From assembly GCF_963676685.1 (NCBI RefSeq), contig NC_092357.1, positions 38,316,001 through 38,380,000 on the forward strand: 64,000 nucleotides of DNA. The letters are read 5' to 3'. The DNA comes from Mytilus edulis. Its lineage: Eukaryota. The position numbers and the translations under genes were made by a program. The notes beneath the pieces were generated by a model, which worked only from the letters and a program-made list of their open reading frames with translations, was not told where the DNA came from and did no database searches. This document shows, in pieces, positions 5,096 to 59,176 of this stretch; position 1 is the stretch's first letter; each line of letters opens with the position of its first letter.

Positions 5096-5980
5096 TTATG
5101 CTATTATTATATTCATAGTTTTATGGACCACTGTATCTGTTGTATTGGTCTAACAGAAATAATAGTATTAATACAATATGTTAACTACAATATGATGTTT
5201 CTTATTTCTGTGTATTCAAGGTACCTATGTTTTGGGCTTTGTACAAAGTCATGTGTTTTCTCTGATCGTTAATGAGTCCTTACGATTCATGTAATGAATG
5301 TTGAATGTGAACGGATTGATATTAAGTCTTAGATGCTATGGTTTTTTTTATTATAAGTTGTTACTGGCTTTGAATACGTGGTCAGTAATTGCGAGTACTC
5401 TTATATCTTTACTTTTGGTCTGTTTTGTTATATTTTTTATAGATGTTTTTTGGGTTTTGTATTGATCTGATCAATTAAACCCTTTGCAACTGGTTGTAAT
5501 TGTTTGTTATAGTGTTGTACTTTTGCACCAATGTTCAATATTAGCATAGGGTTCGTTTCTTTATATATGTCATAGTCAGTAGTTCAGTGCTTGTTGTTGG
5601 TTCATGTCTGTAGTGTTTGTTTTTCATAAACTGTATAATAATTGTGATTAATTTTTCATGTCGGCTAGACGGTATGTGATTTGTTCAATTTTTTTAAGGT
5701 TTCAGGGCTGTCTATAATTGCATTCATCCACTTTGCTTGAATTTTGCTGTATTGTTGTCTCATAGTGAATCATACCAATGTACATTTTATTAAAAGTTGT
5801 TAACGAAAAATATAGCTCAATAAGACCGCAAACTGAATCGCTTTCATCCCATATGGGCATCGTTTTACTAATAGGTAAACAATTTTAATTATGAATGATA
5901 TATACATTTATTGACAAATTATTTACAACTGCTTTAGATTTAAATAATATGTAAATATTCATCAGTACTAAAATGTTTGT

Positions 5981-7192
5981 TTAATATACTCCTTTTTTCA
6001 TTGGCATGGGCATTGGCATTGGCATTGGCATATCAGGTTTCATCATGTCCATCATTAGCATTGGCATTGGCATATCAGGTTTCATCATTTCCATCATTTT
6101 CATTTTCATTGGCATTGGCATATCAGGTTTCATCATTTCCATCATTCCCATTGGCATTGGCATATCAGGCTTCATCATTTCCATCATTCCAATTGGCATT
6201 GGCATTGGCATATCAGGTTTCATCATTTCCATCATTTTCATTTTCATTGGCATCGGCATATCAGGCTTCATCATTTCCATCATTTTCATCATTGGCATTG
6301 GCATTGGCATATCTGGTTTCATCATGTCCATCATTGGCATTGGCATTGGCATATCTGGTTTCATCATGTCCATCATTGGCATTGGCATTGGCATATCAGG
6401 CTTCATCATTTCCATCATTTTAGGCATCATTTCCATCTTTCCTTTCATCTCCATCATTTCTTTCATTTTCATCATGTCCATCATTTCTTTCATTTTCATC
6501 ATTTCCATCATTTTACATTTCATTTCCATCATTGGCATCATTTTCATCATTTCCATTTTACCTTTCATTTCCATCATTTTCATCGGCATCATTTCCATTG
6601 GCATCATTTCCATCATGCCACCTTTACCTCCCATACCGCCCATCATTTCCATTGGCATCATTTCCATCATGCCACCTTTGCCGCCCATACCGCCCATCAT
6701 TTCCATTGGCATCTCAGGTTTCATTGGCATCATGTCCATCATACCACCTTTACCGCCCATACCGCCCATCATTTCCGTTGGCATCATTGGTTTCATTGGC
6801 ATCATGTCCATCATACCACCTTTACCGCCCATACCGCCCATCATTTCCATTGGCATATCAGGCTTCATCGGCATCATTTCCATCGGCTTCATTGGCTTCA
6901 TTGGCATCATGTCCATCATGCCACCTTTACCGCCCATTCCGCCCATCATTTCCATTGGCATATCAGGCTTCATCGGCATCATGTCCATCATTGGTTTCAT
7001 TGGCATCATTTCCATCATGCCACCTTTACCGCCCATACCGCCCATCATTTCCATTGGCATCTCAGGTTTCATTGGCATCATGTCCATCATGGCACCTTTG
7101 CCGCCCATACCTCCCATCATCTTTTTCATGCCATAGGCGTTCACGCCAGCCAATAAGGCTACAGTTGTAAACACGAAAAATGATGCCATCAT
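5981..7192 (-). CDS. Secreted methionine-rich repetitive protein, copy 1 (403 aa; putative ligament/shell-matrix structural protein)
   Basis: Hydrophobic signal peptide ending VNA|Y; 7 MGGMGGKG[GA] modules; E/K/M core with one Cys; 9 MMKPD modules; ends KKGVY. Acceptor TTTTGTAG|G at 7208/7207, AATAAA at 5912-5907, upstream exon at 9131. Confidence 0.93.
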   Translation of the reverse strand: MMASFFVFTTVALLAGVNAYGMKKMMGGMGGKGAMMDMMPMKPEMPMEMMGGMGGKGGMMEMMPMKPMMDMMPMKPDMPMEMMGGMGGKGGMMDMMPMKPMKPMEMMPMKPDMPMEMMGGMGGKGGMMDMMPMKPMMPTEMMGGMGGKGGMMDMMPMKPEMPMEMMGGMGGKGGMMEMMPMEMMGGMGGKGGMMEMMPMEMMPMKMMEMKGKMEMMKMMPMMEMKCKMMEMMKMKEMMDMMKMKEMMEMKGKMEMMPKMMEMMKPDMPMPMPMMDMMKPDMPMPMPMMDMMKPDMPMPMPMMKMMEMMKPDMPMPMKMKMMEMMKPDMPMPMPIGMMEMMKPDMPMPMGMMEMMKPDMPMPMKMKMMEMMKPDMPMPMLMMDMMKPDMPMPMPMPMPMKKGVY

Positions 7193-9130
7193 GAGATTCG
7201 ACGAAACCTACAAAACATGCAGTGATTGTTATATCAGAATTATATTAATAATTCATACATGCATTTTTCAAAGGTAGTCAGCGAATAATTCCTAAAATTG
7301 AATACACGATGTTAACCAAATGATTTACATATGAAAGAATATAATGAACTTTTTAGATTTATATTTTTTTTCTGAAAATACAGTTATCCATTTATTCTTT
7401 TTAATAAGAAAATGTATTTAAAGTCCTTCTGTCATTGTTACTTTTGCGTGAAGTTGCGTGAAGTCAGTTTTTCTGTCATATCTCACCGAGACCAGTGTAA
7501 AATCAACCATCCGTGAAGATACTATTTATTATACAGTGATTATAACAGCGAATTATTGCTTGGCATCACAGTTCGGAGCTATTATTTCGACATACACGCC
7601 GTCTTGAATTGAAAACTTATCACATAAAGATTCTGATTGGTTGCTAAACGATGAGGCAAAGATACAACAACTGCTATTGGCTTAAATTCTATAAATTATT
7701 ACAGACTTTTCCCGTCACAGGAGAAGAGATCAAATGCCGGAAATGTGTATTTCAGTTCCGTTCAACTGTTCTTATTTCATATTTGTTTTAATTATGCATA
7801 TATTGCAAACTGAAATTGAAATATCAATTATAAGAACGTGTGTATTTGTTAATTTGAAATATGAACGATTTGTTTTACTAAACAATGTTCCTATACAACG
7901 TTAACAAAAATGAGTTATTTGTATTTTATAATTTCGGCCAATCACATACCCAGACATGCACAACCTGCATAGTCGTAAAGAGAACAACATATTAAAAACA
8001 CGGGTGTATAATGCACTCTTCAAGTAAATCAATTTCTAAAAATTACCCATTTCCAATACTAAATCAAAAGCCATCTGCACACATATTACCTTAAATTATG
8101 ATAGAGCGAAGCAGGCCACAATTTTTTAAAAAGCTCAAACTTGTATAATATTAAAATTTCCCTAAGCTCGAGCTCTTTACAACATATATCCATTCACAAA
8201 TATAAGACTAGTATTAATAGAAAAGATATAGATATCAGGAACTGTAGCAAAAGCTTTATCAAACCCAAAAAACTTTTATGACGTCTCGTCACGTTAGTAA
8301 ATGTGTTCCCAAACCCTATCTGTATTACATTAACTTACAGGAGAAAACATATAGTTGGAGAATTTTATAAAGTGTTGGTTTTTTTTTTTTTAATATCACA
8401 CCCTGTATCGATCCTCAACCAATATAAAATCCCGAGTACAGCTCTTGGGATTACTAGTATAGTGGTGTTGATCACTCGTTGATTTATTTGACTGTGTTAA
8501 TCCCTTGTTTTATTTAGCGTAAATTGACTTCCTTGTTAATAACCATGTAGTAATTTTTGCAGTTTTTATCACATCATATTATGACAAATATGTTTTCAAT
8601 TAATCCATCCCAAAACTACTCGCATTTTAGAGTTCATATGAATTTAGTACTTATTGGATCAAAGTATCGAAAGCGGTCTTAGGTATTTTTCTTCATCAGT
8701 TACGATCAAACACAAAACGTTTGAAGGTTATGATAAATTGATAACTGAATACATTTGATGACAAATGAACAAATATATCCGTAAAAGAATGAGTCGTTTT
8801 TAAGAAATATAATTGTAAAAGATATAAGGTGTATTTGATAGCCCATAAAATATCATCAAAATGTAAGCAGATCCTTTTGCTAGATTTATTTTATTTCGAT
8901 TTAAGACCAAATTGATACTAATGCAAATATAAGGTAACGTCCGAGTCTGTCTTTCCTTTGTATATTTTTTAATCAAATAGCTGGAACAAGAGTTCTCTGA
9001 CCTAAGAATATTTAAGGCTTCACTAATGTTTCTCTGTCTTATAGTTTCAAGTTTAAGTTCATTTTTTTCGCCTAAGTACATCATTAATGTAGCATACTGA
9101 GGGGTGATAATAAGTGATTTACTTTCTTAC

Positions 9131-9480
9131 CTGAGTTTTAACTAGGCGGCAAGTTGGTATCGATGGAAGGCCGAGGATAGTTCTGCGATCGTTACAATCA
9201 TATTCCTCCTATTTATACAATCTATAATTTCTGCTAATTAAGCTCATTACGTAATAGAACATAGGTTTTATTAAAGATATGCAACGACATTTTATTTCAT
9301 CAAAATTATGTGATAGTCCTAACACGACAACCATGTCCGACAAATGTTTGTCATAAAATACATAATCTTTAACATACCATAAAATTAACACTTTAATTGA
9401 CACACATATGTTGTAAGGGATCATAGTTAAACATGCCTTTTTGCTAATATTTTTTGCATCATTGACATATTTCTCCTACC
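9131..9480 (-). promoter_or_regulatory. Promoter and non-coding exon 1 of Met-rich gene copy 1
   Basis: TATAAATA 9217-9210; donor CTCAG|GTAAGA after 9131; predicted intron 9130-7208; upstream block conserved with three paralogues. Confidence 0.85.
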
Positions 9481-10299
9481 ATCCTTTATCTATACGAATG
9501 AAAACAGCGTGTGGATGTGTTTTAGATTGTTCCCACATAACATAAACCACACTTATCTTAATCACTGTTGACATGGATTTTACTATTTCTGATCAAAAGA
9601 ACAAGTGTTGGTGTGTTTGGTGACATGAATACAGAGGTGGCTATTTAATGGACGTAAGAAAAACATTTTGGTAAGAAATTAGAATAACATGCAATACAGA
9701 AACGTTTTTCTTAAATTTGTTTTTCTTTTAAATTGTGACACAAATTCCAATTTGATTCCATTATAGATAAATATATATATCAATTTGTCACTTTTTGAGA
9801 TACTAGTTTATCAGTTTGATGTACGACTGTTTCAGATAAAAGCTAAATTTTCAATTTTTCGTGGACAAAATTTCAAAATTACATAACCAAAATATTTTTT
9901 ACGTTAGGGTTGTTTCTTTATAGTTTTATTTGTTAGTGCTTTTTAGTTTAAGGTTTTAAATTGCAATTCACAATCAATTTAGTATACATAATGCTACATC
10001 TTCGTTTCGTCACATTCATTATAATGTTTTATTCCAAAATTAACATCTATGTTTTCCTTTGGTTGCAATCAACAATTTAGGGATCATGCATAACATCCCT
10101 AGGTGGTGATATTATTTCTAAAGATATTTGTATAAAACAAGATATCATATGAATAAGAATATTGTACGGATGTTTGAATAACATGAATAAGTGTAATTTT
10201 TATACAATCAAACCCTTTTTTTGAAGTAAGATTAAGGGCAAAGCGTACATTGAACAACTTGTTGTGCCTTGTCTTTGTATTCAAATCGTACTATTTCGA

Positions 10300-11330
10300 G
10301 TCTCTTGTTAAAGAAATTTGCACTCATGTATCCCACATACAAAAACATCATTACACAAGATGAGATGCGAATCATATTATATTGTATGAGTCGAATTTAT
10401 TCAGACATTTGTCAAAAACAAGTATATTAAAAACAAGAACATTTAATTTCACATTCAGATATATTGATGATGCTATTTCCATTAAAAATCCAAATTTTTC
10501 TGATTGACTTCAACTGAAAAAGAGGGACGAAAGATACCAGGTCAAACTCATAAATTGAAATTAATGAGAACGCCATGGCTAAAATTAAGAAGACAACAGA
10601 AAAATCAGGGGGTGATATCATGTGCTCCGGAAGGGTAAGCAGATCCTGCTCCACATGTGGCATCCTTCGTGTTACTTAATTTATTACAAATCCGGTAAAT
10701 AGTCTAATATGGTAGGTCACTTTGGTGAAAAGGGGTTTGTATTGTAGTTACGACTTGAGGAACAAATCCGATATCATCTGTGAAACGGTTATTTTATAAC
10801 AGTCAACCAGCTCGTGATGGCGTCCGAAAAGTTATGAAGGGATGATTTCAACTGCACCATTTGGAACTCTTGGTTTAATAGATTCCCTGTGAGCAGCAAT
10901 CCTCTATTAAGGAAATCATGATAGGAAATACGAGCCCGGTAATATCGTATCAATTAGGAGATTAATACTCCATATGCAGGCGCTTCTGCAATCTTGCTAC
11001 ATAGAAATGGAAAGTTTACAATTGGGAAGCTGAAATCATCTCTTTCGTCGTACAGTTTTGTTTTCTAACAAACGAGACGATTTCAATTTAGAAATTTACC
11101 TACCTTAGTAACAATGTACAAACTTCATCTGCGTATTGAATATTCATTTCCCGACTAATTCTGTATGCATTGGCTTGCAACTGCTACTCATACTTTGTAA
11201 AATGTCAACAGTGTATGAGCAGAAAAACGATGAACCAGGGGTATTTCAATGAATTCGTCTGGTTTTTTTTAAAGATTCAGCGGACTGATTAATCAGAAAA
11301 CCAAAAAATTCAACTTTAAGACGTTTTATT
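10300..11330. mobile_element. Decayed Penelope-like RT (paralogue of 2810-3375) interrupted by an inverted Penelope-derived repeat (~10517-11070)
   Basis: Plus strand FNFTFRYIDD near 10440-10470; the minus-strand insert reads YDERDDFSFPIVNFPFLCSKIAEAPAYG. Confidence 0.7.
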
Positions 11331-11394
11331 TAATTTCAAGATTCTTTCTCCAAGTTCGTGACGGACATTGGTAGAATTTAGCTGATATAGCATA

Positions 11395-11620
11395 CTATTG
11401 ACACTCGATTTAAAGAGTGGATATCATCAAGTAGCCATCACTCCAGAAGAACGCCCCAAACCAGCCTTTTCATTTAAAGATAGTGTGCTTTGGCAGGTTA
11501 CTGTTTCAACTTTTGGAACTTCTAATGATCCTGCTGTCTTTGAAAGGATTAACATAAAACACATGTCTATTTAGATGACATACAAGTGTTTCCAAGACTT
11601 TTGAGGAACAGATTGATAGC
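11395..11620 (+). mobile_element. Decayed Ty3/Gypsy RT fragment (paralogue of 3408-3800)
   Basis: TLDLKSGYHQVAITPEERPKPAF..W..FGTSNDPAVFER..YLDDI, with a similar internal deletion before YLDD as the first copy. Confidence 0.8.
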
Positions 11621-13714
11621 TTCTTTATGCTTTTATGTGTATTATGACATTTGTGGGCGAAGCCAAAAGTGTATGTAGCAAGTTTGCATGCTCCGAGTAG
11701 GCTTTTCGCGTCGATGCGGAACGCTCGCTAGTTTTAAAATTGTAAAACACAATCATTTTGCACCAAGCAAAAGATTGTTTATGTTGGAATATGACACAAA
11801 ATCATATTAGCTTATGACAGAAATTGGTAAATGTCTTTTTCAAAACTATAGTAAAATATTTTAAGTCATTAATTGGAGACTACCCATAACTCCGTCATCT
11901 GCCGTACTGAACCAAGCTGCGAAGTCAGTGTTTATATTTAGGCTTGCACTAAGCAGATTTGCTCGGTGCCGCACCAAGTGAAATAAGTTGGTGAAAAAAT
12001 ATTTCAATTAATAATATTTTACTTATCTTTATTTTATTACTATGTCAAATATATATAACCTGCACCAAGAAGGGGCTCAAATGATTTGTTGTGGACCAAC
12101 TAGATTTCCTCGCACCAAGTATTATAAGGAATAATTGTTTAGCTTTTAGAGACAAATGTACCTGTATCTATATTAAGATATATCTCTATTCATATGTTTT
12201 ACGAACCACACTGTATTTGTTGTGTTGCTTAACATAAATAATAGTATTAATACAATATATGAACTACAATATGATGTTTATAATTACTTCCTACACCAGA
12301 GGCCCAGATAAGTAACGACGGGTATCCTGACCCCGGAACGTTACAATACATTTGATTATTTAGTAAGAGTCAATCAAGAGAAGATTATATCAGAGGAATA
12401 CAAAACATTATTTACAGAAAGGCATATGACTTATGGCAAAAAAGCACACAGCCAACACTTATAGAAAAAAGTGCATGAGGAGAACACCACAATTACAATT
12501 TACAATTTGAAATTGACGAATATAAAGCCCTCATTTGCATTACATCTCTACCTCACCCCACTCAAGTTGTTTTCGTTTCCAGAGCTACTACCTAAAGCAT
12601 AATAGACCTAAGTTATTTTACAATACTATTGTATACTTATATGCATATTCAAGGTACCTATTTTGGGGCTTTTTACAAGGGCATGCTGTTTTTCTCTGAT
12701 TGTTAATGAGTCCTTTTGCATCATGCAGTGCATGTTGAATGTGTACTGATTGATATCTAGTCATTAATGCCAGATTGTTTTATTGATTTCAATCGGCTTT
12801 GCATTTGCTGTCAGTAACAGCGAGTACTCTTGGTTTTTTTTTTTTCTTTTTTTCGTTTGGTCTGTTTTGTTTCTAGGGATGTATTTTTTATAGATGTTTT
12901 TAGGCTCTGTATTGGTCTGACCAATTAATATTTTTTCAACTGATTGTAATTGTTTGTTCTTGTGTTGTACTTTTACAGTACCGTTCAAGCTTAGCGATAT
13001 GTTGGTTTCTTCAAATATGTCACCCTGTCATATTCTGTATTGCCTTATCAAGATCGTAGCCTGCAGTTCAGCGTTTGTTGTTGGATTATGTCTGTAATCT
13101 TGGGAAATTGTATTGTTATAAATTATGCCATTATTTTTCAATTAAGCTGTTTCCTAATTGTCATGTTGGGGTATTCGAAAGCCTATTATAAAGGTATTAT
13201 AAAGTATTTTTTTTTTTTCATTATTGAAGGCTGTCTATAATTGCTCTCATCCACTGAATTTCAAATTTGGTTGAAACTTTTCTCATTGGCTATTATACAA
13301 CATTATCTCCTGATTTTTATTTTTGATTAATACTGTGGATTCATTATTATTCGATGGATACCAATTTTTGCGGGTTTCGTGGGTACTGGTGAGTCACCAA
13401 TTCAAATTTTTAACGAATAACATATTTTCAATAGGCTTTTTACAGAGATGGACACAACCACGAAAACAAATATCCACGAATATACAACTTTTCAGCAATC
13501 AACGAAAATTGATAGATAGGGAAGCTGAATTACTTCAGTCCCTAATAGGCGATTTTGCCAAACTTGTCATTCTCTTATAAATAAGTAATTAACTGCTAAA
13601 AGTAAACAATTCTTAATTATGAATGATATATACATTTATTAGCAAATTATCTACAATTATTTAAGAATCGTATTATATATAAATATTCATCAGTATTATA
13701 AAAAAAAAGTTTGT

Positions 13715-15016
13715 TTAATATACTCCTTTCTTCATTGACATTGGCATTGGCATACCAGGTTTCATCATGTCCATCATTGGCATTGGCATTTGCATTGGCA
13801 TAGGCATACCAGGCTTCATCATGTCCATCATTCCCATTGGCATTGGCATACCAGGTTTCATCATGTCCATCATTGGCATTGGCATATCAGGTTTCATCAT
13901 TTTCATCATTCCCATTGGCATTGGCATATCAGGTTTCATCATTTCCATCATTTTCATTGGCATTGGCATTGGCATATCAGGTTTCATCATGTCCATCATT
14001 GGCATTGGCATATCAGGTTTCATCATTTCCAGCATTTTCATTTTCATTGGCATTGGCATGTCAGGTTTCATCATGTCCATCATTCCCATTGGCATTGGCA
14101 TTGGCATTGGCATATCAGGTTTCATCATTTCCATCATTTTAGGCATCATTTCCATCTTTCCTTTCATCTCCATCATTTCCTTCATTTTCATCATGTCCAT
14201 CATTTCTTTCATTTTCATCATTTCCATCATTTTACATTTCATTTCCATCATTGGCATCATTTTCATCATTTCCATTTTACCTTTCATTTCCATCATTTTC
14301 ATTGGCATCATTTCCATTGGCATCATTTCCATCATGCCACCTTTGCCGCCCATACCGCCCATCATTTCCATTGGCATCTCAGGTTTCATTGGCATCATGT
14401 CCATCATACCACCTTTACTGCCCATACCGCCCATCATTTCCATTGGCATCATTTCCATCATGCCACCTTTACCGCCCATCATTTTCATTGGCATCATAGG
14501 TTTCATTGGCATCATGTCCATCATGCCACCTTTACCGCCCGTACCGCCCATCATTTCCATTGGCATCATTGGTTTCATTGGCATCATGTCCATCATGCCA
14601 CCTTTACCACCCATACCGCCCATCATTTCCATTGGCATTTCGGGTTTCATTGGCATCATGTCCATCATGCCACCTTTGCCGCCCATACCGCCCATCATTT
14701 CCATTGGCATACCAGGCTTCATCGGCATCATGTCCATCATGCCACCTTTACCGCCCATACCGCCCATCATTTCCATTGGCATACCAGGCTTCATCGGCAT
14801 CATGTCCATCATGCCACCTTTACCGCCCATACCGCCCATCATTTCCATTGGCATATCAGGCTTCATAGGCATCATTTCCATTGGCATCATAGGCTTCATT
14901 GGCATCATGTCCATCATGCCACCTTTGCCGCCCATACCTCCCATCATCTTTTTCATTCCATAGGCGTTCACGCCAGCCAATATGGCTATAGTTGTAAGCA
15001 CGAAAAAGGATGCCAT
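13715..15016 (-). CDS. Secreted methionine-rich repetitive protein, copy 2 (433 aa)
   Basis: Signal peptide ending VNA|Y; 9 GGMGGKGG-type modules; same core with single Cys; 6 MMKPD plus 3 MMKPG modules; ends KKGVY. Acceptor TTTCAG|G at 15037/15036, AATAAA at 13640-13635. Confidence 0.93.
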   Translation of the reverse strand: MASFFVLTTIAILAGVNAYGMKKMMGGMGGKGGMMDMMPMKPMMPMEMMPMKPDMPMEMMGGMGGKGGMMDMMPMKPGMPMEMMGGMGGKGGMMDMMPMKPGMPMEMMGGMGGKGGMMDMMPMKPEMPMEMMGGMGGKGGMMDMMPMKPMMPMEMMGGTGGKGGMMDMMPMKPMMPMKMMGGKGGMMEMMPMEMMGGMGSKGGMMDMMPMKPEMPMEMMGGMGGKGGMMEMMPMEMMPMKMMEMKGKMEMMKMMPMMEMKCKMMEMMKMKEMMDMMKMKEMMEMKGKMEMMPKMMEMMKPDMPMPMPMPMGMMDMMKPDMPMPMKMKMLEMMKPDMPMPMMDMMKPDMPMPMPMKMMEMMKPDMPMPMGMMKMMKPDMPMPMMDMMKPGMPMPMGMMDMMKPGMPMPMQMPMPMMDMMKPGMPMPMSMKKGVY

Positions 15017-15705
15017 GTTTTGAGATTCGGTGAAACCTGAAATGCATTTTCAAAAAGGAATTTGCGTAAATTTTATAAAATTTCAGACACGATCTTAATT
15101 TGATGATAATCATACATGTCATATGAAAAAAACTTCGATTTAAAAATATTTATCTAAACATACAGGTTTCCATTTATCATTTCCCATAAGTACTTTTCAT
15201 AATTCCTTCTGTCATTGTCACTTTTTTTGTCAAGTTGTATCATACTACGTAAAACAAGTACAAAATATCCCTATATACATGATAGAGTAATAATATAGCT
15301 CTTGACGTGTTTATATCCTATACATCCTTTGATTCAAATGTTTATGAAGAAGATAAATCAAGAAAAGCGCATCGAACGCACAAATTAATGAAGAGTTTTT
15401 TATTTTAATATTCTAGTGAAGATTTCATATGAGATGACCAATGATAACGGGCACGTGCGCCCTTAGTTTCTAGTGACAATGTTTCAAAGCACTCTTCTGT
15501 GATGAGAAAGAAAATTATCGGTCGGTAAGAGCAAACGACAATTTTGTAAAATAGCGATACTTATGTTTATTCTTTCTTCTAGTTATCGAAATTGGTTTTA
15601 TTTGGAATAAGCAAGTAGTGAATTTTACAGGTTTTTTTTTTTTTCGTCTCAAATGGTTTTATAAAAATATACTTTTAAATAATCCCAAAACCTCTTGCAT
15701 TTTAA

Positions 15706-17273: not shown

Positions 17274-17630
17274 CTGAGTTTTGGCAAGTTGATATCGATG
17301 GAGAGCCAAGGAAAGTTCTGCGGTCGTTTGAACGATCATTTGCCTATTTATACTATTGATAATTTCTGCTAATTGAGTTCATTATGTAATAAAACATATG
17401 TTTTATAAAACAAAATCAACGCCATTTTATTTCATCAAAATTATGTGATAGTAAAAACACGATAACCATGTCCGACACATGTTAGACATGTGATACATAA
17501 TCTTTTCGAAACCATAAAGTCAACACTTCAATGACACAAATAGTTTGTAAGGGTTCATATACTAACATGCTTTTCCGTTGGTCTTTTTTTTTGTCTTATC
17601 GACATACTTTCCACAGCCTCCTTTATTCAT
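17274..17630 (-). promoter_or_regulatory. Promoter and non-coding exon 1 of Met-rich gene copy 2
   Basis: TATAAATA 17352-17345; donor CTCAG|GTAAGA after 17274; predicted intron 17273-15037. Confidence 0.85.
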
Positions 17631-18863: not shown

Positions 18864-20000
18864 TTAGGTCTTTCCACTTTTCTTGTGGAAAGACCTATTG
18901 AATTTGTTCTGATTTTTTTTTTTTTTCTTCCGCCTAATTTTTTTCTTGCGGTGTAAAAATGTTTCAAAAGATGTCGCTTAGTTTTTTTGTATATGATATC
19001 ATTCAGTCTATACGCTTTTGAAACTGAACCTGTTTAACCGAACACTTTTCTTTGTAAGAGTTATCTCCCCAAACACTGTTTTTCTTGTTATCAGATCTCC
19101 TCCGCAATCGTAAAAGAAAGCGACAAATTTATTTTTCCAAATTGCTCGTTATATCCTCAGGATGTTACGTTTTATTTTCACCGAAGCTTTACGAAAACTC
19201 CATATGAGAGTTATTTCCCCTTTTGTAATGAAATAAATGAAATAAATTTGTTACTGGAAAACCATTAGTGGTAGAGGCCTAGGGTCTTTTGATTTGAGGT
19301 CCTTGGTCCAAAAAAATGAAAATGAGGTCAAGGTCAAAGGTCAAGGTCATGTTCAAAAATATGATTTTGGCTTGTTATCTCTTATTTTCAGAAATCCTAT
19401 AAGATATCGACAAAATATTTTCACAAAATGAGTGTTACGACATGGCGTAACACGTAAATTTGAGTTATAAGGGTACGTAAACATTTGATGCGACTTTTCC
19501 CCCTTTTATATCTTGTATTAGCTGTATGGTAATATAACTCATTATCATTATAAAGTAAAGGCTTAGGGTCTTTTGATTTAAGATCCTTGGTCCAAAAAAA
19601 TGAAAATTAGGTCCAGGTCAAAGGTCAAGGTCAAATTCTAAATTTTGATTTTGGCTTATTTTCACTCTTTTTCATTAACGTTATAAGATTTCAACAAATT
19701 ATTTTACTAAATTGTTAGTTGCGACATGTCGTAACTTATAAATTTCGATTGGAAGGGTGTGAAGAGAATAAATGGGATTTTTGCCCCTGTTATATTTAGA
19801 ATTATGCGTAAAGTGATATTACTCATGAACCATACATAATACAGACCTAGGGTCTTTTAATTTGGGATCCTTGGTTTATGACCTTGAAATTGAGGTCAAG
19901 GTCATAGTTTAATTGGACGTTCTAGATTTTGACCTTCGCTTGAAATTCATATTTATATATCATTTAGCCATAGGAACTGACATTTTCAACTGAATTTTAA
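18864..20000. repeat. Helentron-like cassette with ~283-bp internal tandem repeats
   Basis: Starts with hairpin TAGGTCTTTCCAC..GTGGAAAGACCTA; CTAGGGTCTTTT..GGTCAAGGTCA units at ~19277, ~19560, ~19843. A related hairpin start occurs at ~56010. Confidence 0.6.
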
Positions 20001-23110: not shown

Positions 23111-23665
23111 TTTAGATGATGTTTTGAGTTATAGTGCAAAATTGAGAGGGTTTTTGTTGGGTTGGAGAGGGGTCTTGATCATCATTTTCGATAATCTTCG
23201 ATAATCTTTATTTCTTATCCAAATTTTCTGCATTCTGTATATTGAAGCACCATTTTTTCTCTCCTCTCAATTTTGTTGCCAATAAGACCAATAGATTCAT
23301 TATATAAGACTGCTGTTTTGAGACATAACAACCAAAACAAGACTATGCAATATGTATCTTGAGAGGGAAAAAAATGATTTTGTTTAAATCTTTATTGTTA
23401 AATTTGTATTGGTATGCTAATGAAATACAGAAAAAGAAAATAAAAGTACACATGCTTTATTCGTGTATTTAATCCTATGCAATAACTACATCAGAAGCTG
23501 CTACCCAAGAAAGGTCTTTTCTTTTCTTTTCACGAAAAAGTGACTAAAGCCCTCGAAATCCAAGCTTAAATCCTTCTGTTATGAATGATATCTATATTTA
23601 TTTTTAAACTACATCTGCTTTAAAGTTAAATAATATGTAAATATTCATCAGTTTTAAATGTTTGT

Positions 23666-24430
23666 TTAGTATGCTCCTTTCTTCATTGGCATTGGTTTCA
23701 TCATTTCCATTGGCATTGGCTTCATCATTTCCATTGGCATTGGCATGGGTTTCATCATTTCCATTGGCATCATTTTTGGCATCATTTCCATCATCTTAGG
23801 CATCATTTCCATTTTCATTGGCATCATTTCCATTGGCATTGGTTTCATCATTCCCATTGGCATCATTTTCATCATTTCCATTGGCATCATTTCCATTTTC
23901 ATTGGCATCATTTTCATCATTTCCATCATCTTAGGCATCATTTCCATTTTCATTGGCATCATTTCTTTCATTTTCATCATTTCCATCATTGGCATCATTT
24001 CCTTCATTTTCATCATTTCCATCATTTTTGGCATCATTTCCATCTTTCCTTTCATCTCCATCATTTCCTTCATTTTCATCATACCCATCATTTCTTTCAT
24101 CTTCATCATTTCCATCTTTTTACCCATCATTTCCATCATTGGCATCATTTTCATCATTTCCATCATTTTACCTTTCATTTCCATCATTGGCATCATTTTC
24201 ATCATTTCCATCATTGGCATGGGCATCATTTCCATCATTTTCATCGGCATCATCTCCATCATCATCGGCTTCATTGGCATCATTTCCATCATGCCACCTT
24301 TACCACCCATACCGCCCATCATTTCCATCGCCATCATTTTCATCATGTCCATCGGGGGTGGCATCATTTTCATCATACCGGCGTTTACGCTAGCCAATAT
24401 GGCTGCAGCTGTAATCACGATAAAAGCCAT
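23666..24430 (-). CDS. Secreted methionine-rich repetitive protein, copy 3 (254 aa, divergent)
   Basis: True start MAFIVITAAAILASVNA|G at 24430, after acceptor TTTTTCAG|G at 24451/24450. One GGMGGKGG module, expanded E/K/M core, ends KKGAY. Hand count about 127 Met in 237 mature residues. AATAAA at 23602-23597. Confidence 0.92.
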   Translation of the reverse strand: MAFIVITAAAILASVNAGMMKMMPPPMDMMKMMAMEMMGGMGGKGGMMEMMPMKPMMMEMMPMKMMEMMPMPMMEMMKMMPMMEMKGKMMEMMKMMPMMEMMGKKMEMMKMKEMMGMMKMKEMMEMKGKMEMMPKMMEMMKMKEMMPMMEMMKMKEMMPMKMEMMPKMMEMMKMMPMKMEMMPMEMMKMMPMGMMKPMPMEMMPMKMEMMPKMMEMMPKMMPMEMMKPMPMPMEMMKPMPMEMMKPMPMKKGAY

Positions 24431-26795
24431 GTTTTGATATACGACGAAACCTGAAAAACAAAAGGCACATGGTATAAATCTAATATGTAAGTTAGTCAAG
24501 CATGTAGAGTCTTCAATTGTCAGCTTAAGTTATGCTAGATAATCGAGTTTGAATATCGATGAGAGTATATATTTAAAGATTTGTAACTGAAAAGGTGGCC
24601 ATTGTTTTATCAAAAGAATGGGGCTGTAAATAAATTATATATTTGTTTCAATTTAACCACTAGCGTTAACCAGTATTAAGACGTTTTATCATTGTGATAA
24701 TTTTGTTTAATATCCTTCGCTCAAATAACAACAAATTCTCTCGTATGATCCTGTGACAACATAAAATTAACTACCAATCATACAATAAAACTATCGCCGC
24801 GATATAGCCTTTTTGTGCTAATGCGGCGTAAAGCAACCAACAATCAATCAAAACAATAAAACTAAACAAGCAGGAAAAAAAACTAAACTCAAGTCATGTG
24901 TTTCTGTTTTACTATACAGATAAATAGATTGTTTATCCAGAAAAATATTTCGGAACCAAATTTTATCAAGTAATATCAATTTCAAAACAAAGATATATAC
25001 ATATTCAAAGCATAAAGGAATAAATAAACACAACATGGTGCATTCTCAATCAATAAATATCAATACTAAGCGAAAGAAGAAAAAGGACAATTTACCGTTC
25101 ACGTTTTGTATATATGTAAATGGAAAGTCATGGTATATATGTACGCTGTGCTTTTGTATATTATTACTTAAATAGGTATCTGCTGACTAAATTGAATATT
25201 GGAAACTCAGTTGGGAATATATATTTAAAACAGATACTAAATCTTTTGAGAAAACCCATAAAAAAATGAAATATTTACATGCCCTCATTGATCCATTACG
25301 TGCATATGTGAAATTACTTTCAAAAACCCAAGCTCGTGAATGAGAGAAGGTTTGTCTACAGATGGGAAGTTAAATTATAAGGTGATGTTGGCGTGAACTT
25401 TTCTTTTAAATCTTTAAACAATTTCCATTCACGAAAAGAAATCTTAAAATCCGCGTGTGTTTTCATAAAATTCAGCGTACAATGTAAACATTTTAAAATA
25501 ATTAGTAATAATATTTCGAAAACCAATTTGAAAAGCATTGATTGTAGATTCCGGCGCCGAGTTTAAATTTAAATTGATGCTGTATTTCACAAAAGTCTAT
25601 GACAGGCCAACATTATTTAAATGTTAGTTAGCCCTCATACTAAGTAAAAATTCCCTCAATCGCGTAGTGAGAACATGAAATTAAGCAATCAAGAACTATT
25701 TTAGTTGCATGAACATTACATTTGTTCATAAAAAAAGTATATATTAAGCATACACAAAATAATGATGAATTTTCATTGCAAAAATTATCAAAATGAAGCA
25801 ACAAAGAAATAATAGAAAGCTGAACATCGAAATTGTATCCTATCAAATTAAGAACACTAACTTTTCCTTTATACATTTACTGCTTTCAGTTAAGTATTCT
25901 TACAATTGTTGCAGGGTATACGTTCGCTGTATTCCCTTCACTTTTGACAAATATATTTTTTTAGATATATCACGTAATCACACTTTTTCATAGACTATAA
26001 TTAGATGATTATTGCGCATATTTTTTTTAGTACCAGATTAAGTTTTTATTGTTAGAAAATTTACTAAAAAATAAATGCAAATTTGTGTAAGGTCATTAAT
26101 ATTAAAAATAATTAAATTCGATTGAGAACCCTCCAAAAAATGTAAAAAAAATATCATGTTGTTTTAAAACATATGAGCGGTTATATTGTACATATAAAGC
26201 AAATAACATGCATCTTTGACACTAATCATTTGCATTATAATAACTAATTGAAAACGAGAGAAAATTGCAGATAGAATCGTACTGAAATTCAATTTGTTTA
26301 TAAGGTGTTCAATAACTGTTATAACGGGATACTTTTACAACTGTTTTTGTGGGATGTTTAGTACAAACACTAATTAATAATTACCAGTTAAAAATTCAAA
26401 ATTTTAAATAAATGATGGAATAAGATTTAATGAAGAATTATACTCTGTATGTAGTTTTTTCCAAATCTTTTAGTATCTAAAAATACTATGTGTTTGCATT
26501 GAATTTTATTAAAATATTCTTACAAAATACTTATTTGCTTTTCTAAGCAACTTTAACATCTATTTACTCAATATAATCAATTAAAGAGAGGGAAAATTGC
26601 ATAGAATCGTGATAAAATTGAGATTTGAATTATAAGTGTTCAATAAGTTTCATAAAGGTGTGCTTTTACAACGGTTTTATCACAGTGTATGTGTATGACA
26701 CACAATAATTATTACATAACAATCAAATGAGTTTGAATTGAAAAGAAAAAATTCAAAGTGTTTTAAACAGTTAAATGATAAATAAATTTTCTTAC

Positions 26796-36054: not shown

Positions 36055-39000
36055 TTACAGTTCTTGCTTTGGCTTGGTTCTTTTACCACCTAAATTATTT
36101 TGTAATTTAAGCATTGTCCTAAACTCATCCGTGCTAATGCCGCCATCTTTGTTTTTGTCGGCGAATTGAAATAGTTCATTCAACATCCCTTCCATTATTG
36201 CTGGATCATCTGCCATTGGAAAATTACCATCCTTCATAGCAATGCTCATTACAGCTTCCAACTATAATATACAATGTAAGAACGAAAATTATAACTTTGT
36301 TCAAGTCGATTTATAAATCATGTCAACATTTAACGTTTACTTTTCTATATTGGCTAGAGGTAAAGGGGGAGGGTTGAGATCTCATAAACATGTTTGACCC
36401 CGCTGCATTTTTGCGCCTGTCCCAAGTCAGGAGCCTCTGGCCTTTGTTAGTCTTGTATTATTTTTAATTTTAGTTTCTTGTGTACAATTTGAAGTTTAGT
36501 ATGGCGTTCATTATCACTGAACTAGTATATATATTTTTTTAGGGACCAGCTGAAGGACGCCTTCGCGTGCGGGAGTTTCTCGCTGCATTGAAGACCTGTT
36601 GGTGACCTTCTGCTGTTGTCTGTTCCATGCATGGTCGGGTTGTTGTCTCTTTGACACTTTCCCCATTTTCATTCTCAATTTTATTTAAGATACGATCTAT
36701 ATGTAAATGGATTTAATAATTTCCTAACACATTTTTACTCAATTGTTGTATAGGTTTAAAACATAATATCAAATTAATACACCCAAAAACTAAATAATGC
36801 AAGTTTAAGTCAGCATACAAGTAAAAGTAACTAAACGGCATCTGAAATCGTCTAGACTGATGTTTATTAATAAAAACGTACGAAATAGGCACACTATTAC
36901 AAAAAGTACTAATAAAATTTAAAATTTAGTATTTTCGTATAGCAAGTTTTAAGTTTAAAATCATCACGGTTGTTCTTAAGTTCATGACGGATTTTTGCAT
37001 AAAGTTCTTCCAAGGTCTTACACTTCAAACGATTTATTTCTACAGAGCGAAATTTCGATGTCGTCTTCTCTTCGTAATGGATATAGAGGCACATTTCAGC
37101 TATTCAGCGCAGTGACTGCGTAAATATTCTGTATAGTTGGAACCCCTCCCCCTCCTTATTTTTTTGTCTTGGGTTGGGAATCTTTCTTTTGAAAATGACT
37201 GGATCCGCCACTTGGTTGCATAAAATATAACAGGCTTGTTGAGAGTTATCTCATTGGTAATCATACCACACCTTCTTTTTGTATCGTTAGCATATATGTA
37301 TTTAAAATTCATATTGAATTTGATTCTCAATCACATTTTCTTTTCTTTCTTATTTATTTAAATTTTTACCAACCAAATCTGAGAGAAAACCTACCTCTGT
37401 TACATCCAAAACACCATCTTCATTGAGATCAGCGCGTGTAAATCTTTGTAGAACTTCATCAGCTGGCTTGGCGTCAAGTAACTCTATTTCATAAATCACA
37501 GTGGCTCCAGGTGGGAAACGGTCTGAAATACAAATAAATCAGTATTAGCGACAGTAGAATTGAGAATGGAAATGGCAAATGTGTCAAAGAGACAACAACC
37601 CACCCAAAAAGGCAGCAAACAGCCGAAGGTCACCAATGGATCTTCTACACAGCCAGAAAATTCCGCACCTGCAGGCGGGATTCAGCTGGTACATATATTC
37701 AATGTTACTTATTATTTCACTGCATGTTGATTTTGATAGCGAAATCAACATTTGATTGGATGAAACTATCACACGTCACGTCGAACAAAACTTCATATTC
37801 CCCTCTGAACGTCAGGATTGCCTTGTGCGACATTACCTGCCGTTAATGTTTAAATAAAACATTTTGATAGGGTTTGTTTTAAAAAATATTTCAAGTCTAA
37901 AAACAATTAAAAAAGAATGAATAAGTAATTAACTTTAAATCGGTAATGGTTATCATGGTGTATGTTGTGTTTAGTTATAAAATAAAACGGATAAGAAAAC
38001 AATTATGTATTTTTTTTTATTCAGAATTTTAAAAAAAGTAGACAGTGGAATGAAACATTCAGTTCCCTTGGCTTCGTGAGATATGAAGATTTGTCCCCTC
38101 GAAAAGTCATATCTCCCTCGGACGATGCCCTCGTGAAATATGATTTTTCTTAGGTGAACAAATCTTCATATTTCCCTCAGGCACAGGAAATAAATGTATT
38201 GTATTCAATATTGCCGGAATCTTTCGTTTCGTTCTCTTCATCTGTTTCCATAGTAGATAACACTTCTTTTTCTTAACTAATTTTTTCTGCATTCTTTATG
38301 TACCTTTTTCGTTTTTTTCAAAAGATGGGGATTGAATGGAGAAGGTTTGGATATAAAAAAAAAATGACTAAGTTTAAATCAAGCTATATTCTCGTGAAAG
38401 TCTCCAGTCAGGAACTTCGCTCTACTTATCTCTGTTAATAACATACAAACAGTGGCGGATGCAGGAATTTTCGAAAGGGGGGTGATAGCCCAGGGCAAAA
38501 GGGGGGGGGGGGTGCAAAGGTGCAAAACATATGTCCCGATTCAAATGCATTGATCGGCCAAAATAAAGGGGGGGTGCGCACCCCCGGAACCCCCCCCCCC
38601 CCCCTGGATCCGCCACTGTACAAATGTGTATGTCATAATCATTTATGGATTTGGATGAGTAGATGTCTCATCCCCTATTTTGATATAAACAAGAATGTGT
38701 CCATAGTACACGAATGCCCCACTCGCACTATCATTTTCTATGTTCAGTGGACCGTGAAATTGGGGTCAAAACTATAATTTGGCATTAAAATTAGAAGGAT
38801 CATATCATAGGGAACATGTGTACTAAGTTTCAAGTTGATGTAACTTTAATTTCATCAAAAACTACCTTGACCAAAAACTTTAACCTGAACTTCGCACTAT
38901 CATTTTCTATGTTCAGTGGACCATGAAATTGGGGTCAAAACTTTAATTTGGAATTAAAATTAGAAAGATCATATCATAGGGAACATGTGTACTAAGTTTC

Positions 39001-57000: not shown

Positions 57001-59176
57001 TGTAATTTCAGGGCTTAGCTCATTGTTGAAAGTCATACAGCATGACGTACAGTGACTTAAAGTTGTTAATTTCTCTTTCATTTGGTCTTTTGTGGAGAGT
57101 TGTCTCATTGGCAATCAAGTATATGTCTTTCAATCTATCCATGTACTATAAATGTATCTTGTAAGGCCAAATAAAAATATATGTGTGGTTCCAGTAACCC
57201 TACCATCTCTACTTTTTGGCTTAAAAATAGCCTACCCTAAAGATTTTATTGTCATTTTTCATTAAGCACTGTTAAAGTCAGAACGTTGCTCCCATAGACT
57301 CAATGTAAAAAAAAAACATAAAATAAAAAAAAAATCCCTACCTACCTACCCTAACTTTTTTTGAAATGTAACTGGAACCACACATACTTTTTTATGTGGC
57401 CTAAAATATTGGAACATTGAAAAAATCTAAGAAAAGAGTTGAACATGGCTTTAATTTCATTTGCAGGCAATAGTTCTTTGTGAGTTCATAGAAAAGTATA
57501 AAGAAGAATTCAAAAACAAAGAAGTTATAGAACTTGGAGCAGGATCAGGGATTGTTGGCATTGTAGCAGCATTGATTGGTAAGAGTTTATATATTTAACT
57601 AGAGGCATTTAGGGGTGGGGCAGGGGGGGCAGTGGTTTAGTTTCTTTGTTGAATAAATGAGATGAAATGCTGAACTCTATTAAAAGATTATGAGCTAACC
57701 TGAGAAAAACTGTTTAAGGAATTTTTTCATATCCCAAAACCTGCTAAGTTTAAGGATTGTATAATAGAAAATAAAAATTACTTGTACAAATAAATTTTGT
57801 AAGAAAATAAGGGGAGATTATTCAAACCTTCTAAGAAAATATATCAATACAACACTTTACCTGTATATAAAGTATATTATTATTTACTTCTTCAAGTAAA
57901 TAATAATAACTTGTACAAGTAGTTCCCCTGACTGACTTAAGCCATTTAAATTGTGGTTTGAATGCTTATGAAATAAATATATATCCACCTGTAACTAAAG
58001 GTAAACATGGTAATGGGTGTAAACAATACATGTGCAGATCCCTTTAACTCCTTACAGACCCACAACACTTTTGACTTCATTGTTAAATACTTGATAAATC
58101 TAAAAAGTCTAGATATAACAAGAATGTGTCCAAAGTATATGGATGCCCCACTTGCACTATCCTTTTCCATGTTCCATGGACTGTGAAATTGGGTAATACT
58201 AATAATCTAATTTGGCATTTAAATTAGAAAGATTATACTATAGGGAACATATGTACTAAGTTTCAAGTTGATTGGACTTCAATTTCATCAAAAAATACCT
58301 TGACCAAAAACTTTAACCTGAAACTCCCCCTTTTATTTTCTATGTTCAGTGGACCGTGAAATTCAAAAGTCTAATTTGGCTTCAAAATTAGAAAGATCAT
58401 ATCATAAGGAACACATGTGTACTAAGTTTCAAGTTGATTGGACTTCAGCTTCATCAAAAACTACCTTGACCAAAAACTTTAACCTGAACGGACGGACAGA
58501 CGGACAGACGAACGGAGGAACGGACGCAAGAACGGAGCCACAGACCAGAAAACATAATGCCCCTCTACTATCGTAGGTGGGGCATAGAAAGAAGATGTGG
58601 TATGATTGGTAATGAGGCAACTCTCCACAAGAGACCAAAATGACACAAAAAATTTAAGTTTGCTCTTTTCAAGTTTTGTCAGCGTGGTCAGTGGAGCACT
58701 TGTCTGCAAAGTAATTGTTCAATAACTATAATGATCTATAATCATGACAATGTAAATAATACAAAACGCTTTTAATTTTAGGAGCCAATGTTGTGATCAC
58801 AGACAGGGAGCAAGTCTATCCCTACCTAAAACGTGTTTTAAAGGATAATCTGAAAGACAAAGAAAATGTCAAATATTCAGTGAAAATCTTAGACTGGACA
58901 AGAGACCTTCATAAAATTCCTCAGAAGTACGATATAATTCTAGGTGCTGATGTCATTTATGTGGAGGAAGTGTTTGATGCTTTGTTAGCGACACTACAAC
59001 ATCTCAGCCATGATGAGACAAAAATATATTTGTCGTGTAAAATACGATATGATCGAGACACAAGATTTTTAGACATGGTACAGAAACACTTTACGCTCCA
59101 AGAAGTCTTGCATGACAAGGATAAAGATATTAAGATTTTCTTATGTAAAAAAATAAAAATAAAAATATTGAGCTAA
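54079..59176 (+). CDS. METTL21A: Protein-lysine N-methyltransferase METTL21A-like, ~221 aa, 3 coding exons
   Basis: Exons 54079-54237, 57467-57578, 58782-59176 in frame; motifs IKQDWGNLGVAAVVWDAAIVL, VIELGAGSGIVGI, VVITDR, LDW, YDIILGADVIY, CKIRYDRD. An in-frame upstream ATG at 53980 is an alternative start. Confidence 0.92.
54323..54527. mobile_element. MITE with internal CCGAAATCCC repeats
   Basis: TIRs ATGAGGGGGGATAGGA / TCCTATCCCCCCTCAT. Confidence 0.8.
57165..57401. mobile_element. PIF/Harbinger-type MITE (TAA target duplication)
   Basis: TAA-GGCCAAATAAAAATATATGTGTGGTTCCAGT ... ACTGGAACCACACATACTTTTTTATGTGGCC-TAA. Confidence 0.85.
58117..58588 (+). repeat. Second Helentron-associated satellite cassette (about two monomers)
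   Basis: Same architecture and sequence family as 38689-39298, with a longer GGAC/AGAC microsatellite. Confidence 0.85.

What the first reader, a model, noticed from the sequence alone, without database searches (positions are those of the whole stretch)
5981..15016. End-functionalised design: the only two Tyr are the first and last mature residues, in mirror-image Y-G-M-K-K ... K-K-G-V-Y ends
Seen: in copies 1 and 2 predicted cleavage after VNA exposes YGMKK, the chain ends MKKGVY, and no other Tyr occurs in ~400 residues. Established: molluscan structural proteins are often cross-linked by Tyr/DOPA-quinone chemistry with Lys, and shematrins end in basic-Tyr tails. Inference: chains may be end-linked into a network with a defined strand length, like a telechelic rubber. 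Copy 3 has only the C-terminal Tyr and could act as a chain terminator or pendant chain.
Basis: partly seen in the sequence, partly recalled or inferred. Interest (0 to 1): 0.8.

Follow-up and report, generated by a model that had tools for sequence, protein, structure and literature searches.

The report
Mussel methionine-rich ligament-type protein genes
These are tandem mussel genes for secreted, floppy proteins made almost half of methionine, most like the pearl-oyster hinge-ligament protein LMP. Their only tyrosines do sit at the two chain ends, but whether those ends glue the chains together is untested, and the idea has already been floated for scallop abductin.

Summary
Observation confirmed. 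Copies 1 (5981-7192) and 2 (13715-15016) encode 403 and 433 aa proteins with Tyr only after the VNA signal-peptide site and as the last residue. Copy 3 (23666-24430) keeps only the last Tyr.

The genome (mussel-like, 1.37 Gb) holds seven such two-exon genes. All seven end in KK(G)(V/A)Y and six start A|YGMK.

Mature chains are 97-99% M/P/G/K/E/D, so "no other Tyr" is expected by chance (P about 0.8). The ends, however, are conserved where introns and intergenic DNA are barely alignable. The C-terminal Tyr survived two in-frame deletions and a V-to-A change next to it.

Pinctada LMP, read from a paper, has the same layout: S|YG start, MMKPD repeats, Tyr only near the ends. Reviews already speculate about Tyr cross-links at abductin's extremities.

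AlphaFold predicts two disordered repeat halves around a confident central 60-residue helix, so the ends are not the only special sites.

Best reading: mussel LMP-like ligament or shell framework proteins with conserved Tyr/Lys-Lys end motifs. End-linking stays a hypothesis.

The parts
5981..7192 (-). Copy 1 CDS, 403 aa, 44% Met. It lies wholly inside exon 2.
   Evidence: ORF list and composition. Contigs of run X1 cover only about 5906-7215, at word depth up to 14,000.
7136..7192 (-). Copy 1 signal peptide (MMASFFVFTTVALLAGVNA); predicted cleavage VNA|Y.
   Evidence: Read from the sequence with the -3/-1 rule. SignalP was not available.
7133..7135 (-). Copy 1 Tyr20 codon (TAT), the predicted first mature residue, followed by G-M-K-K.
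5984..5986 (-). Copy 1 C-terminal Tyr403 codon (TAT) before the TAA stop; tail M-K-K-G-V-Y.
6407..6589 (-). Copy 1 central Glu/Lys/Met core with a single Cys. Predicted as one long alpha-helix (model residues 201-261, pLDDT up to 88).
   Evidence: AlphaFold2 on the seven-paralog alignment. It is the most conserved internal block in alignment A1.
6590..7120 (-). Copy 1 N-terminal half: 7 units of MMGGMGGKGGMM[DE]MMPMKPxMPME (Gly/Met, abductin-like). Predicted disordered.
5999..6406 (-). Copy 1 C-terminal half: 9 units of MMKPDMPMPMP... (Pro/Met, LMP-like). Predicted disordered.
   Evidence: The repeat was compared by eye with LMP Fig. S3A.
7207..7207 (-). Copy 1 first base of exon 2, after a conserved acceptor (ttttgtag|GTTTCGTCGAATC), 15 nt before the ATG.
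   Evidence: The acceptor is conserved in all 7 paralogs and homology decays upstream of it.
9131..9217 (-). Copy 1 TATA box (GTATAAATAGG, 9209-9217) and non-coding exon 1 (about 58 nt, ending at 9131 before a conserved CTCAG|GTAAGAAA donor).
   Evidence: A conserved block about 1.8-2.3 kb upstream in five paralogs. It was not seen in X1 contigs, so it is inferred from conservation only.
5907..5912 (-). Copy 1 AATAAA polyadenylation signal. X1 coverage ends at about 5906.
13715..15016 (-). Copy 2 CDS, 433 aa. Tyr19 codon 14960-14962, C-terminal Tyr433 codon 13718-13720. Exon 2 starts at 15036, TATA at 17344-17352, exon 1 ends at 17274, AATAAA at 13635-13640.
23666..24430 (-). Copy 3 CDS, 254 aa, 69% identical to copy 1. 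The mature N-terminus is GMMKMM (no Tyr). C-terminal Tyr codon TAC at 23669-23671, tail KKGAY. Exon 2 starts at 24450, exon 1 ends at 26796, AATAAA at 23597-23602.

Best explanation
What is shown:
- The window holds three members of a seven-gene family. Six lie in a roughly 50-kb tandem array and one lies 0.75 Mb away.
- Each gene has two exons. Exon 1 is non-coding, and exon 2 carries the whole CDS and the 3' UTR.
- The genome is mussel-like.
- Each gene encodes a secreted protein of 29-52 kDa that is 44-46% methionine.
- Each protein is built like a block copolymer: a disordered Gly/Met half (GGMGGKGG units), a central Glu/Lys/Met segment predicted to be a long helix, and a disordered Pro/Met half (MMKPDMPMPM units).
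- The two chain ends carry the only aromatic residues and almost the only Lys-Lys pairs (Y-G-M-K-K ... K-K-G-V-Y), and they are kept by purifying selection.

What is inferred:
- These are the mussel counterparts of the pearl-oyster ligament methionine-rich protein LMP. They are insoluble framework or elastomer proteins of the hinge ligament, or of another Met-rich shell matrix.
- The ends act as handles that couple or anchor chains after secretion. The most plausible route is oxidative Tyr (DOPA-quinone or radical) chemistry with neighbouring Lys or Tyr.
- The repeat halves supply entropic or PPII-type elasticity.
- The central helix supplies a further association site.
For: Genes and expression:
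- ORFs are intact and have signal peptides.
- TATA box, donor, acceptor and AATAAA are conserved on the minus strand in all or most paralogs.
- X1 contigs cover only the exon-2 span at very high depth and give zero in the flanks. One run on record as RNA-Seq, labelled 'mollusc metagenome', holds part of it.

Family:
- There are seven members only.

Ends:
- The C-terminal Tyr is kept in 7/7. It survived two independent in-frame 3-nt deletions, a V-to-A change beside it, a synonymous TAT-to-TAC change and a TAA-to-TGA stop change.
- The N-terminal Tyr is kept in 6/7, with synonymous variation in the flanking V, N, A and G codons. pN/pS is 0.23.
- Introns and intergenic DNA are only 45-52% alike, against 75-85% for the UTR and signal region.
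- KK occurs almost only at positions 4 and -5.

Comparison with known proteins:
- Pinctada LMP reads ...TVYS|YGPRNRGKMMPMMPP, then about 30 x MMMKPD, then ...HPTPYNLYQG. Its Tyr lies only at the ends, and Pro follows the YG, so cleavage after it is blocked. LMP is a ligament framework protein.
- Abductin has conserved Tyr at position 20 after a 19-aa signal peptide, and dityrosine 'at the extremities' has been speculated.
- The shematrin C-terminal signature is RKKKY/RRKKY.

Structure:
- The repeat halves have pLDDT below 50. The central helix, residues 201-261, reaches pLDDT 88.
Against: - No orthologue could be aligned. The word search, a scan of 1.84 billion representative proteins, Pfam and the ESM Atlas gave nothing real.
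- The LMP comparison was by eye only, and shared Met-rich repeats could be convergent.
- Tissue of expression is unknown. Three raw RNA runs of a related species label had almost no reads.
- Paralog conservation could partly reflect gene conversion within exon 2.
- AYG|M cleavage would remove the N-terminal Tyr.
- Nothing shows any Tyr modification.
- Met-Lys cross-links are proposed for such proteins.
- From my own unverified recollection, Kikuchi et al. 1987 reported Lys-derived desmosines in bivalve ligaments and called methylene-bistyrosine an artefact.
Confidence: 0.6

Rival explanations
1. The terminal Tyr are incidental. They sit in the only non-repetitive bits of an expanded repeat gene and are kept for ordinary reasons, such as the signal-peptidase +1 context or C-terminal stability and export. 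The real cross-links run along the chain: Met-Lys sulfilimine, Lys-derived links, or non-covalent association through the central helix.
For: - The lack of internal Tyr is expected by chance (P = 0.80).
- The whole N-terminal segment, not just the Tyr, is under constraint.
- Chains are 44% Met and 11% Lys.
- Met-based cross-linking has been proposed for Met-rich insoluble shell proteins and for abductin.
- The central helix is the best conserved and only confidently structured part.
Against: - The C-terminal Tyr stayed the last residue through three independent changes right beside it.
- The same Tyr-at-ends layout appears in LMP and abductin, and in shematrin tails.
- Lys-Lys is also concentrated at both ends.
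Confidence: 0.3
2. The ends are anchors, not covalent cross-links. The Tyr plus Lys-Lys motifs bind aragonite nanofibre faces or acidic partner peptides, tethering the elastic chain between mineral fibres.
For: - In Pinctada ligament the peptide LICP binds aragonite {110} through coplanar carboxyl and Tyr side chains.
- LMP is said to form the framework between nanofibres.
- Earlier scan notes (unchecked) report LICP-like Tyr peptides encoded elsewhere in this genome.
Against: - The end motifs are basic, not acidic like LICP.
- One Tyr per end is a weak binding surface.
Confidence: 0.12
3. The family is not a ligament protein at all. It is a Met-rich matrix protein of nacre, periostracum, myostracum or byssus (MRNP34/NU-5-like use).
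For: - Met-rich regions occur in insoluble proteins of nacre, prisms and ligament alike in Pinctada.
- The tissue is unknown here.
Against: - The MMKPD repeat and the S/A|YG start match the ligament protein LMP specifically.
- There are no acidic Asp/Glu-rich mineral-binding blocks. The paper notes such blocks for nacre and prism proteins but not for ligament ones.
Confidence: 0.2
4. Not genes: an ATG/CAT-rich satellite that happens to be open in all frames.
For: All six frames are open across the repeats.
Against: - Only the minus-strand Met frame has a signal peptide.
- That strand has a conserved TATA box, splice sites and polyA signal.
- There is transcript-like coverage, and seven intact paralogs with pN/pS of 0.23.
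Confidence: 0.02

Closest known systems
LMP, ligament methionine-rich protein of Pinctada fucata (Suzuki et al. 2019; sequence in Kintsu et al. 2020, PMC7591529, Fig. S3A)
   Same: - Secreted and extremely Met-rich.
- Tandem MMKPD-type repeats.
- The predicted mature chain starts Tyr-Gly.
- Tyr is confined to the two ends.
- A short basic stretch follows the N-terminal Tyr.
   Different: - The LMP repeat is a uniform MMMKPD x about 30, with no GGMGGKGG block, no PMPMPM and no central E/K/M helix core.
- The LMP C-terminus is ...HPTPYNLYQG (two Tyr, not last, not basic), not KKGVY.
- Homology was judged by eye only.
Abductin (Argopecten irradians; Cao, Wang & Bayley 1997, as described in PMC9999432 and PMC13052691)
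   Same: - A secreted Gly/Met hinge-ligament elastomer.
- Few conserved Tyr near the chain extremities, including position 20 right after a 19-aa signal peptide.
- Tyr and Met-Lys cross-links have been speculated but are unknown.
- The N-terminal half here has GGMGG-type units.
   Different: - Abductin is 136 aa, about 58-60% Gly, about 1% Pro, with Phe in the GGFGGMGGGX repeat.
- Here Gly is 12-15%, Pro 14%, Met 44%, and there is no Phe.
Shematrin / KRMP shell framework proteins of pearl oysters
   Same: A C-terminal basic-plus-Tyr tail (RKKKY, RRKKY, RRRKY, PRKKY; PMC3896809) resembles MKKGVY/MKKGY/MKKVY.
   Different: Shematrins are Gly/Tyr-rich with many internal Tyr, and they belong to the prismatic layer. 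There is no Met-rich repeat.
Resilin (dityrosine-cross-linked insect elastomer)
   Same: A disordered elastomer whose network is thought to be fixed by sparse Tyr-derived cross-links.
   Different: Resilin has many Tyr spread along the chain, one per repeat. Here there are at most two per chain, at the ends.

Membership tests
LMP-like ligament methionine-rich proteins | Secreted: N-terminal signal peptide | tested here: met
   A hydrophobic 17-19 aa leader with a VNA site in all 7 paralogs. This is a rule-based reading only; SignalP was not available.
LMP-like ligament methionine-rich proteins | Very high Met content with tandem MMKPD-type repeats | tested here: met
   44-46% Met. There are 9-18 MMKP[DG]M units in six paralogs and none in c3. 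The LMP repeat was read.
LMP-like ligament methionine-rich proteins | Alignable sequence homology to Pinctada LMP | not tested
   LMP is not among the stored proteins, and a sequence read from a paper may not be typed into a tool. Database searches returned no true relatives. The comparison was by eye only.
LMP-like ligament methionine-rich proteins | Located in the insoluble matrix of the hinge ligament; expressed in mantle isthmus | not testable with these tools
   Runs are coded and tissues unknown. X1 shows transcript-like high coverage.
Abductin | GGFGGMGGGX decapeptide repeat, about 60% Gly, about 1% Pro | tested here: not met
   Gly 12-15%, Pro 14%, no Phe in the mature chain.
Abductin | Few conserved Tyr at the chain extremities | tested here: met
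   compared.
Shematrin | Gly/Tyr-rich XGnX repeat body | tested here: not met
   There are no internal Tyr.
Shematrin | C-terminal basic-Tyr signature (RKKKY and similar) | tested here: inconclusive
   KKGVY, KKGY, KKVY and KKGAY have one or two residues between Lys-Lys and Tyr. The signature is quoted.
Telechelic (end-linked) elastomer network | Reactive groups only at the chain ends | tested here: inconclusive
   Tyr and Lys-Lys are only at the ends. However, single Lys (11%) and Met (44%) run along the whole chain, a central helix is predicted, and c1 and c2 carry a Cys.
Telechelic (end-linked) elastomer network | Ends are covalently modified or joined in the mature material, with junctions of three or more ends | not testable with these tools
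   This needs mass spectrometry or amino-acid analysis of ligament.

The most novel reading that the evidence does not exclude
A natural telechelic rubber. Chains of genetically fixed length would be joined essentially only through their Tyr/Lys-Lys end motifs, at junctions of three or more ends. This would give a network of near-monodisperse strands whose stiffness is tuned by which paralog is expressed (237-452 residues). The one-Tyr paralog c3 would act as a chain stopper.
Probability: 0.1. Interest if true: 0.8.

Novelty: new member of a known kind. Interest (0 to 1): 0.42.

Why it matters
The cross-links that make bivalve hinge-ligament proteins insoluble and elastic are still unknown (PMC9999432).

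This family has at most two Tyr per chain of about 400 residues, both at the ends, and a natural one-Tyr variant. That makes it a clean test system. Terminal-peptide mass spectrometry, or Y-to-F recombinant proteins, would show directly whether Tyr or Met/Lys chemistry builds the network.

The family also links two known ligament protein types in one chain: abductin-like Gly/Met units and LMP-like Met/Pro units. That could guide the design of Met-rich synthetic elastomers.

Tried and rejected
Searches and tools that gave nothing:
- Pfam on the three proteins: no family.
- Word-index protein search: nothing at E <= 0.001.
- Full HMMER scan of 1.84 billion representatives: nine hits, all unrelated periodic repeats.
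- ESM Atlas: no usable hit.
- Full-text search for the repeat motifs: no paper.
- No open paper on Mytilus ligament Met-rich proteins.
- I could not verify the old desmosine / methylene-bistyrosine ligament literature.
- Suzuki 2019 and Futagawa 2025 are not held.
- LMP terminal peptides are absent from the Kintsu MS table, but the searched gene model was a 127-aa fragment, so this is uninformative.
- A bacterial promoter scan was irrelevant.
- A search with the signal peptide found only the seven paralogs, so the abductin-like clusters noted elsewhere in this genome are not close kin.

Ideas rejected:
- 'No internal Tyr' as evidence of design.
- The upstream TTG extension of the copy 3 ORF, which crosses the acceptor.
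- The open antisense frames as genes.

Full report
**What is there**

The stretch 5981-15016 holds two intact minus-strand ORFs, c1 (5981-7192, 403 aa) and c2 (13715-15016, 433 aa). A third, c3, lies at 23666-24430 (254 aa from its real ATG). Composition is extreme: Met 44-46%, then Pro, Gly, Lys, Glu and Asp.

Tyr occurs only at residues 20 and 403 of c1 and at 19 and 433 of c2. In c3 it occurs only as the last residue. The extra Tyr in the listed c3 ORF lies upstream of the ATG, in sequence that crosses a splice acceptor. All six frames are open across these ATG/CAT-rich repeats. Only the minus-strand Met frame has a signal peptide and gene signals.

**Gene model**

All paralogs share a splice acceptor 15-20 nt before the ATG (c1 exon 2 starts at 7207), and homology decays upstream of it. 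They also share a 3' UTR with AATAAA about 70 nt after the stop (c1 5907-5912).

About 1-2.3 kb upstream lies a conserved block. It contains GTATAAATAGG (c1 9209-9217), a non-coding exon 1 of about 58 nt, and a CTCAG|GTAAGAAA donor (c1 exon 1 ends at 9131).

The whole CDS therefore sits in exon 2, and the stop after the last Tyr is in the terminal exon.

**Expression**

Contigs of run X1 (kind guessed as RNA) cover only about 5906-7215, at word depths of thousands up to about 14,000. Depth is zero from 7270 to 10600 and below 5767. This is the footprint of an abundant transcript family, not of genomic DNA.

One run on record as RNA-Seq, labelled 'mollusc metagenome', also holds part of the stretch. 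Four coded species labels hold near-identical words.

Three raw RNA runs of one related label had only 5-14 reads. This fits tissue-restricted expression, but the tissues are unknown. Exon 1 was not seen in X1 contigs, so it rests on conservation alone.

**Family**

The genome is 1.37 Gb. The window is on a 71-Mb contig, and earlier scan notes call it a blue mussel, which I did not check. It has seven members:
- six in tandem at C14:38.29-38.34 Mb, of which three are in this window;
- one inverted copy at 39.09 Mb.

Six begin ...(V/I)NA|YGMK(K/N)M. All seven end MKK + (GV/G/V/GA) + Y.

**Is the Tyr pattern more than chance?**

The absence of internal Tyr is not. Mature chains are 97-99% M/P/G/K/E/D. 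Across the seven paralogs only 33 other residues occur internally (I, S, L, N, A, T, C, Q, H, V), all one mutation away from the repeat codons. With the real codon usage, a single-step mutation model gives Tyr a 0.7% share of such changes. The probability of seeing none is therefore 0.80.

The conservation of the ends is more telling:
- Introns and downstream DNA are only 45-52% alike after alignment. The 3' UTR is 75% alike and the signal region 85%.
- The N-terminal 24 codons give pS 0.27, pN 0.063 and a ratio of 0.23. Third-position changes occur in the V, N, A and G codons around an unchanged TAT.
- At the C-terminus, two independent in-frame 3-nt deletions (KKGY, KKVY), one V-to-A change, one synonymous TAT-to-TAC change and one TAA-to-TGA change all left Tyr as the last residue.
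- Lys-Lys, despite 11% Lys overall, occurs almost only at position 4 and at the fifth residue from the end.

Gene conversion within exon 2 could inflate this conservation. The whole terminal segments are constrained, not Tyr alone.

**Cleavage site**

VNA|Y fits the -3/-1 rule. It is the only good site common to all seven, because c3 has Asn at -3 of the alternative. In the six Tyr-bearing copies AYG|M also fits the rule and would remove the Tyr. SignalP was not available, so this stays open.

**Architecture**

c1 reads as follows:
- YGMKK;
- seven units of MMGGMGGKGGMM[DE]MMPMKPxMPME;
- a Glu/Lys/Met core with one Cys;
- nine units of MMKPDMPMPMP...;
- MKKGVY.

Unit numbers differ among paralogs: 2-8 Gly/Met units and 9-18 Pro/Met units. 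c3 has almost none of either. Charges nearly balance, for example K 46 against D+E 47 in c1.

AlphaFold2 was run on the seven-paralog alignment. It gives pLDDT below 50 for both repeat halves and one long helix, residues 201-261, with pLDDT up to 88 for the core. That core is also the best conserved internal block. The Cys is present only in c1 and c2.

**Comparison with what is known**

The published sequence of Pinctada fucata LMP, the major framework protein of the hinge ligament, reads as follows (role):
- signal ...STVYS|YGPRNRGKMMPMMPP...;
- about 30 x MMMKPD;
- ...MGMMMHPTPYNLYQG.

It shares with this family the Tyr-Gly start, the MMKPD unit and Tyr confined to the ends. In LMP a Pro follows the YG, which by established knowledge of signal peptidase blocks cleavage there. 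A second Pinctada ligament protein ends ...PASIY.

Reviews describe abductin as having conserved Tyr at positions 4 and 20 with a 19-residue signal peptide. One review states that its cross-links are unknown. It reports speculation about dityrosine between Tyr 'located at the extremities', and also about Met-Lys sulfilimine.

Shematrins carry RKKKY-type C-terminal signatures. Kintsu et al. argue that Met itself may cross-link such insoluble proteins.

I could not compute an alignment to LMP.

**Mechanism**

Shown:
- secreted, abundant-transcript, low-complexity, largely disordered chains;
- conserved Tyr/Lys-Lys ends;
- a predicted central helix.

Inferred:
- They are ligament-type framework or elastomer proteins, counterparts of LMP.
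- The ends serve as coupling or anchoring handles.

The telechelic-network idea has three weaknesses:
- Polymer logic: two ends that each make one bond only lengthen chains. A network needs junctions of three or more ends, for example quinone plus the two adjacent Lys, or trityrosine.
- Competing reactive groups: Met and Lys run along the whole chain.
- A third special site: the central helix, with a Cys in c1 and c2.

From memory, and unverified here, older biochemistry reported Lys-derived desmosines in bivalve ligaments and called methylene-bistyrosine an artefact. The suggestion that c3 is a chain stopper is chemically sensible but purely speculative. c3 is also the most divergent and shortest member.

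**Verdict**

Its most striking part, 'no other Tyr', is a by-product of a six-letter repeat alphabet. The conserved end motifs are real and shared with LMP, abductin and shematrin-type proteins. The end-linking reading is a fair, testable hypothesis that the literature has already voiced for abductin.

The family is a new, apparently undescribed mussel member of the Met-rich ligament-protein kind. It is notable for combining abductin-like and LMP-like blocks.

Earlier scan notes report abductin-like Gly/Met clusters, with LICP-like Tyr peptides, elsewhere in this genome. They share neither the signal peptide nor the UTR motifs with this family.

Noticed in passing
window 6407-6589 (c1) and the matching part of c2: The central Glu/Lys/Met core (tri-peptide M-M-[E/K] rhythm, 9-nt period) is predicted as a single 60-residue alpha-helix with pLDDT up to 88. 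The rest of the protein is predicted disordered. The core holds the only Cys, and only in c1 and c2.
   Followed up: partly
window 6006-7136 (+), 13767-14963 (+), 13790-15040 (+), 23745-24437 (+): Long antisense and off-frame ORFs (Ile/Gly/Ser-rich, His/Trp-rich) overlap the Met-rich genes. They are by-products of ATG/CAT-rich repeats, not genes.
   Followed up: partly
G000:C14:38291000-38313200 and 39088500-39089950: Four further intact paralogs lie outside the window (mature 320, 348, 415 and 452 aa). Their numbers of Gly/Met and Pro/Met units differ, so the family offers a graded series of chain lengths and block ratios.
   Followed up: partly
window 58793-59176 (+): An exon-sized ORF matches Pfam Methyltransf_16, a lysine methyltransferase (E 4e-20). 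It is probably part of an unrelated neighbouring gene.
   Followed up: no
window 61421-62791 (-): A 456-aa ORF with a reverse-transcriptase domain (RVT_1, E 7e-36), indicating a retroelement copy.
   Followed up: no
window 19278-19904 and 38723-39227: Tandem repeats of 284 nt (2.2 copies) and 169 nt (3 copies, 95% alike) lie in the intergenic DNA.
   Followed up: no
window 50085-50432 (-): A 115-aa ORF has a weak, sub-threshold match to DUF5524 (E 2e-6, below the gathering score).
   Followed up: no
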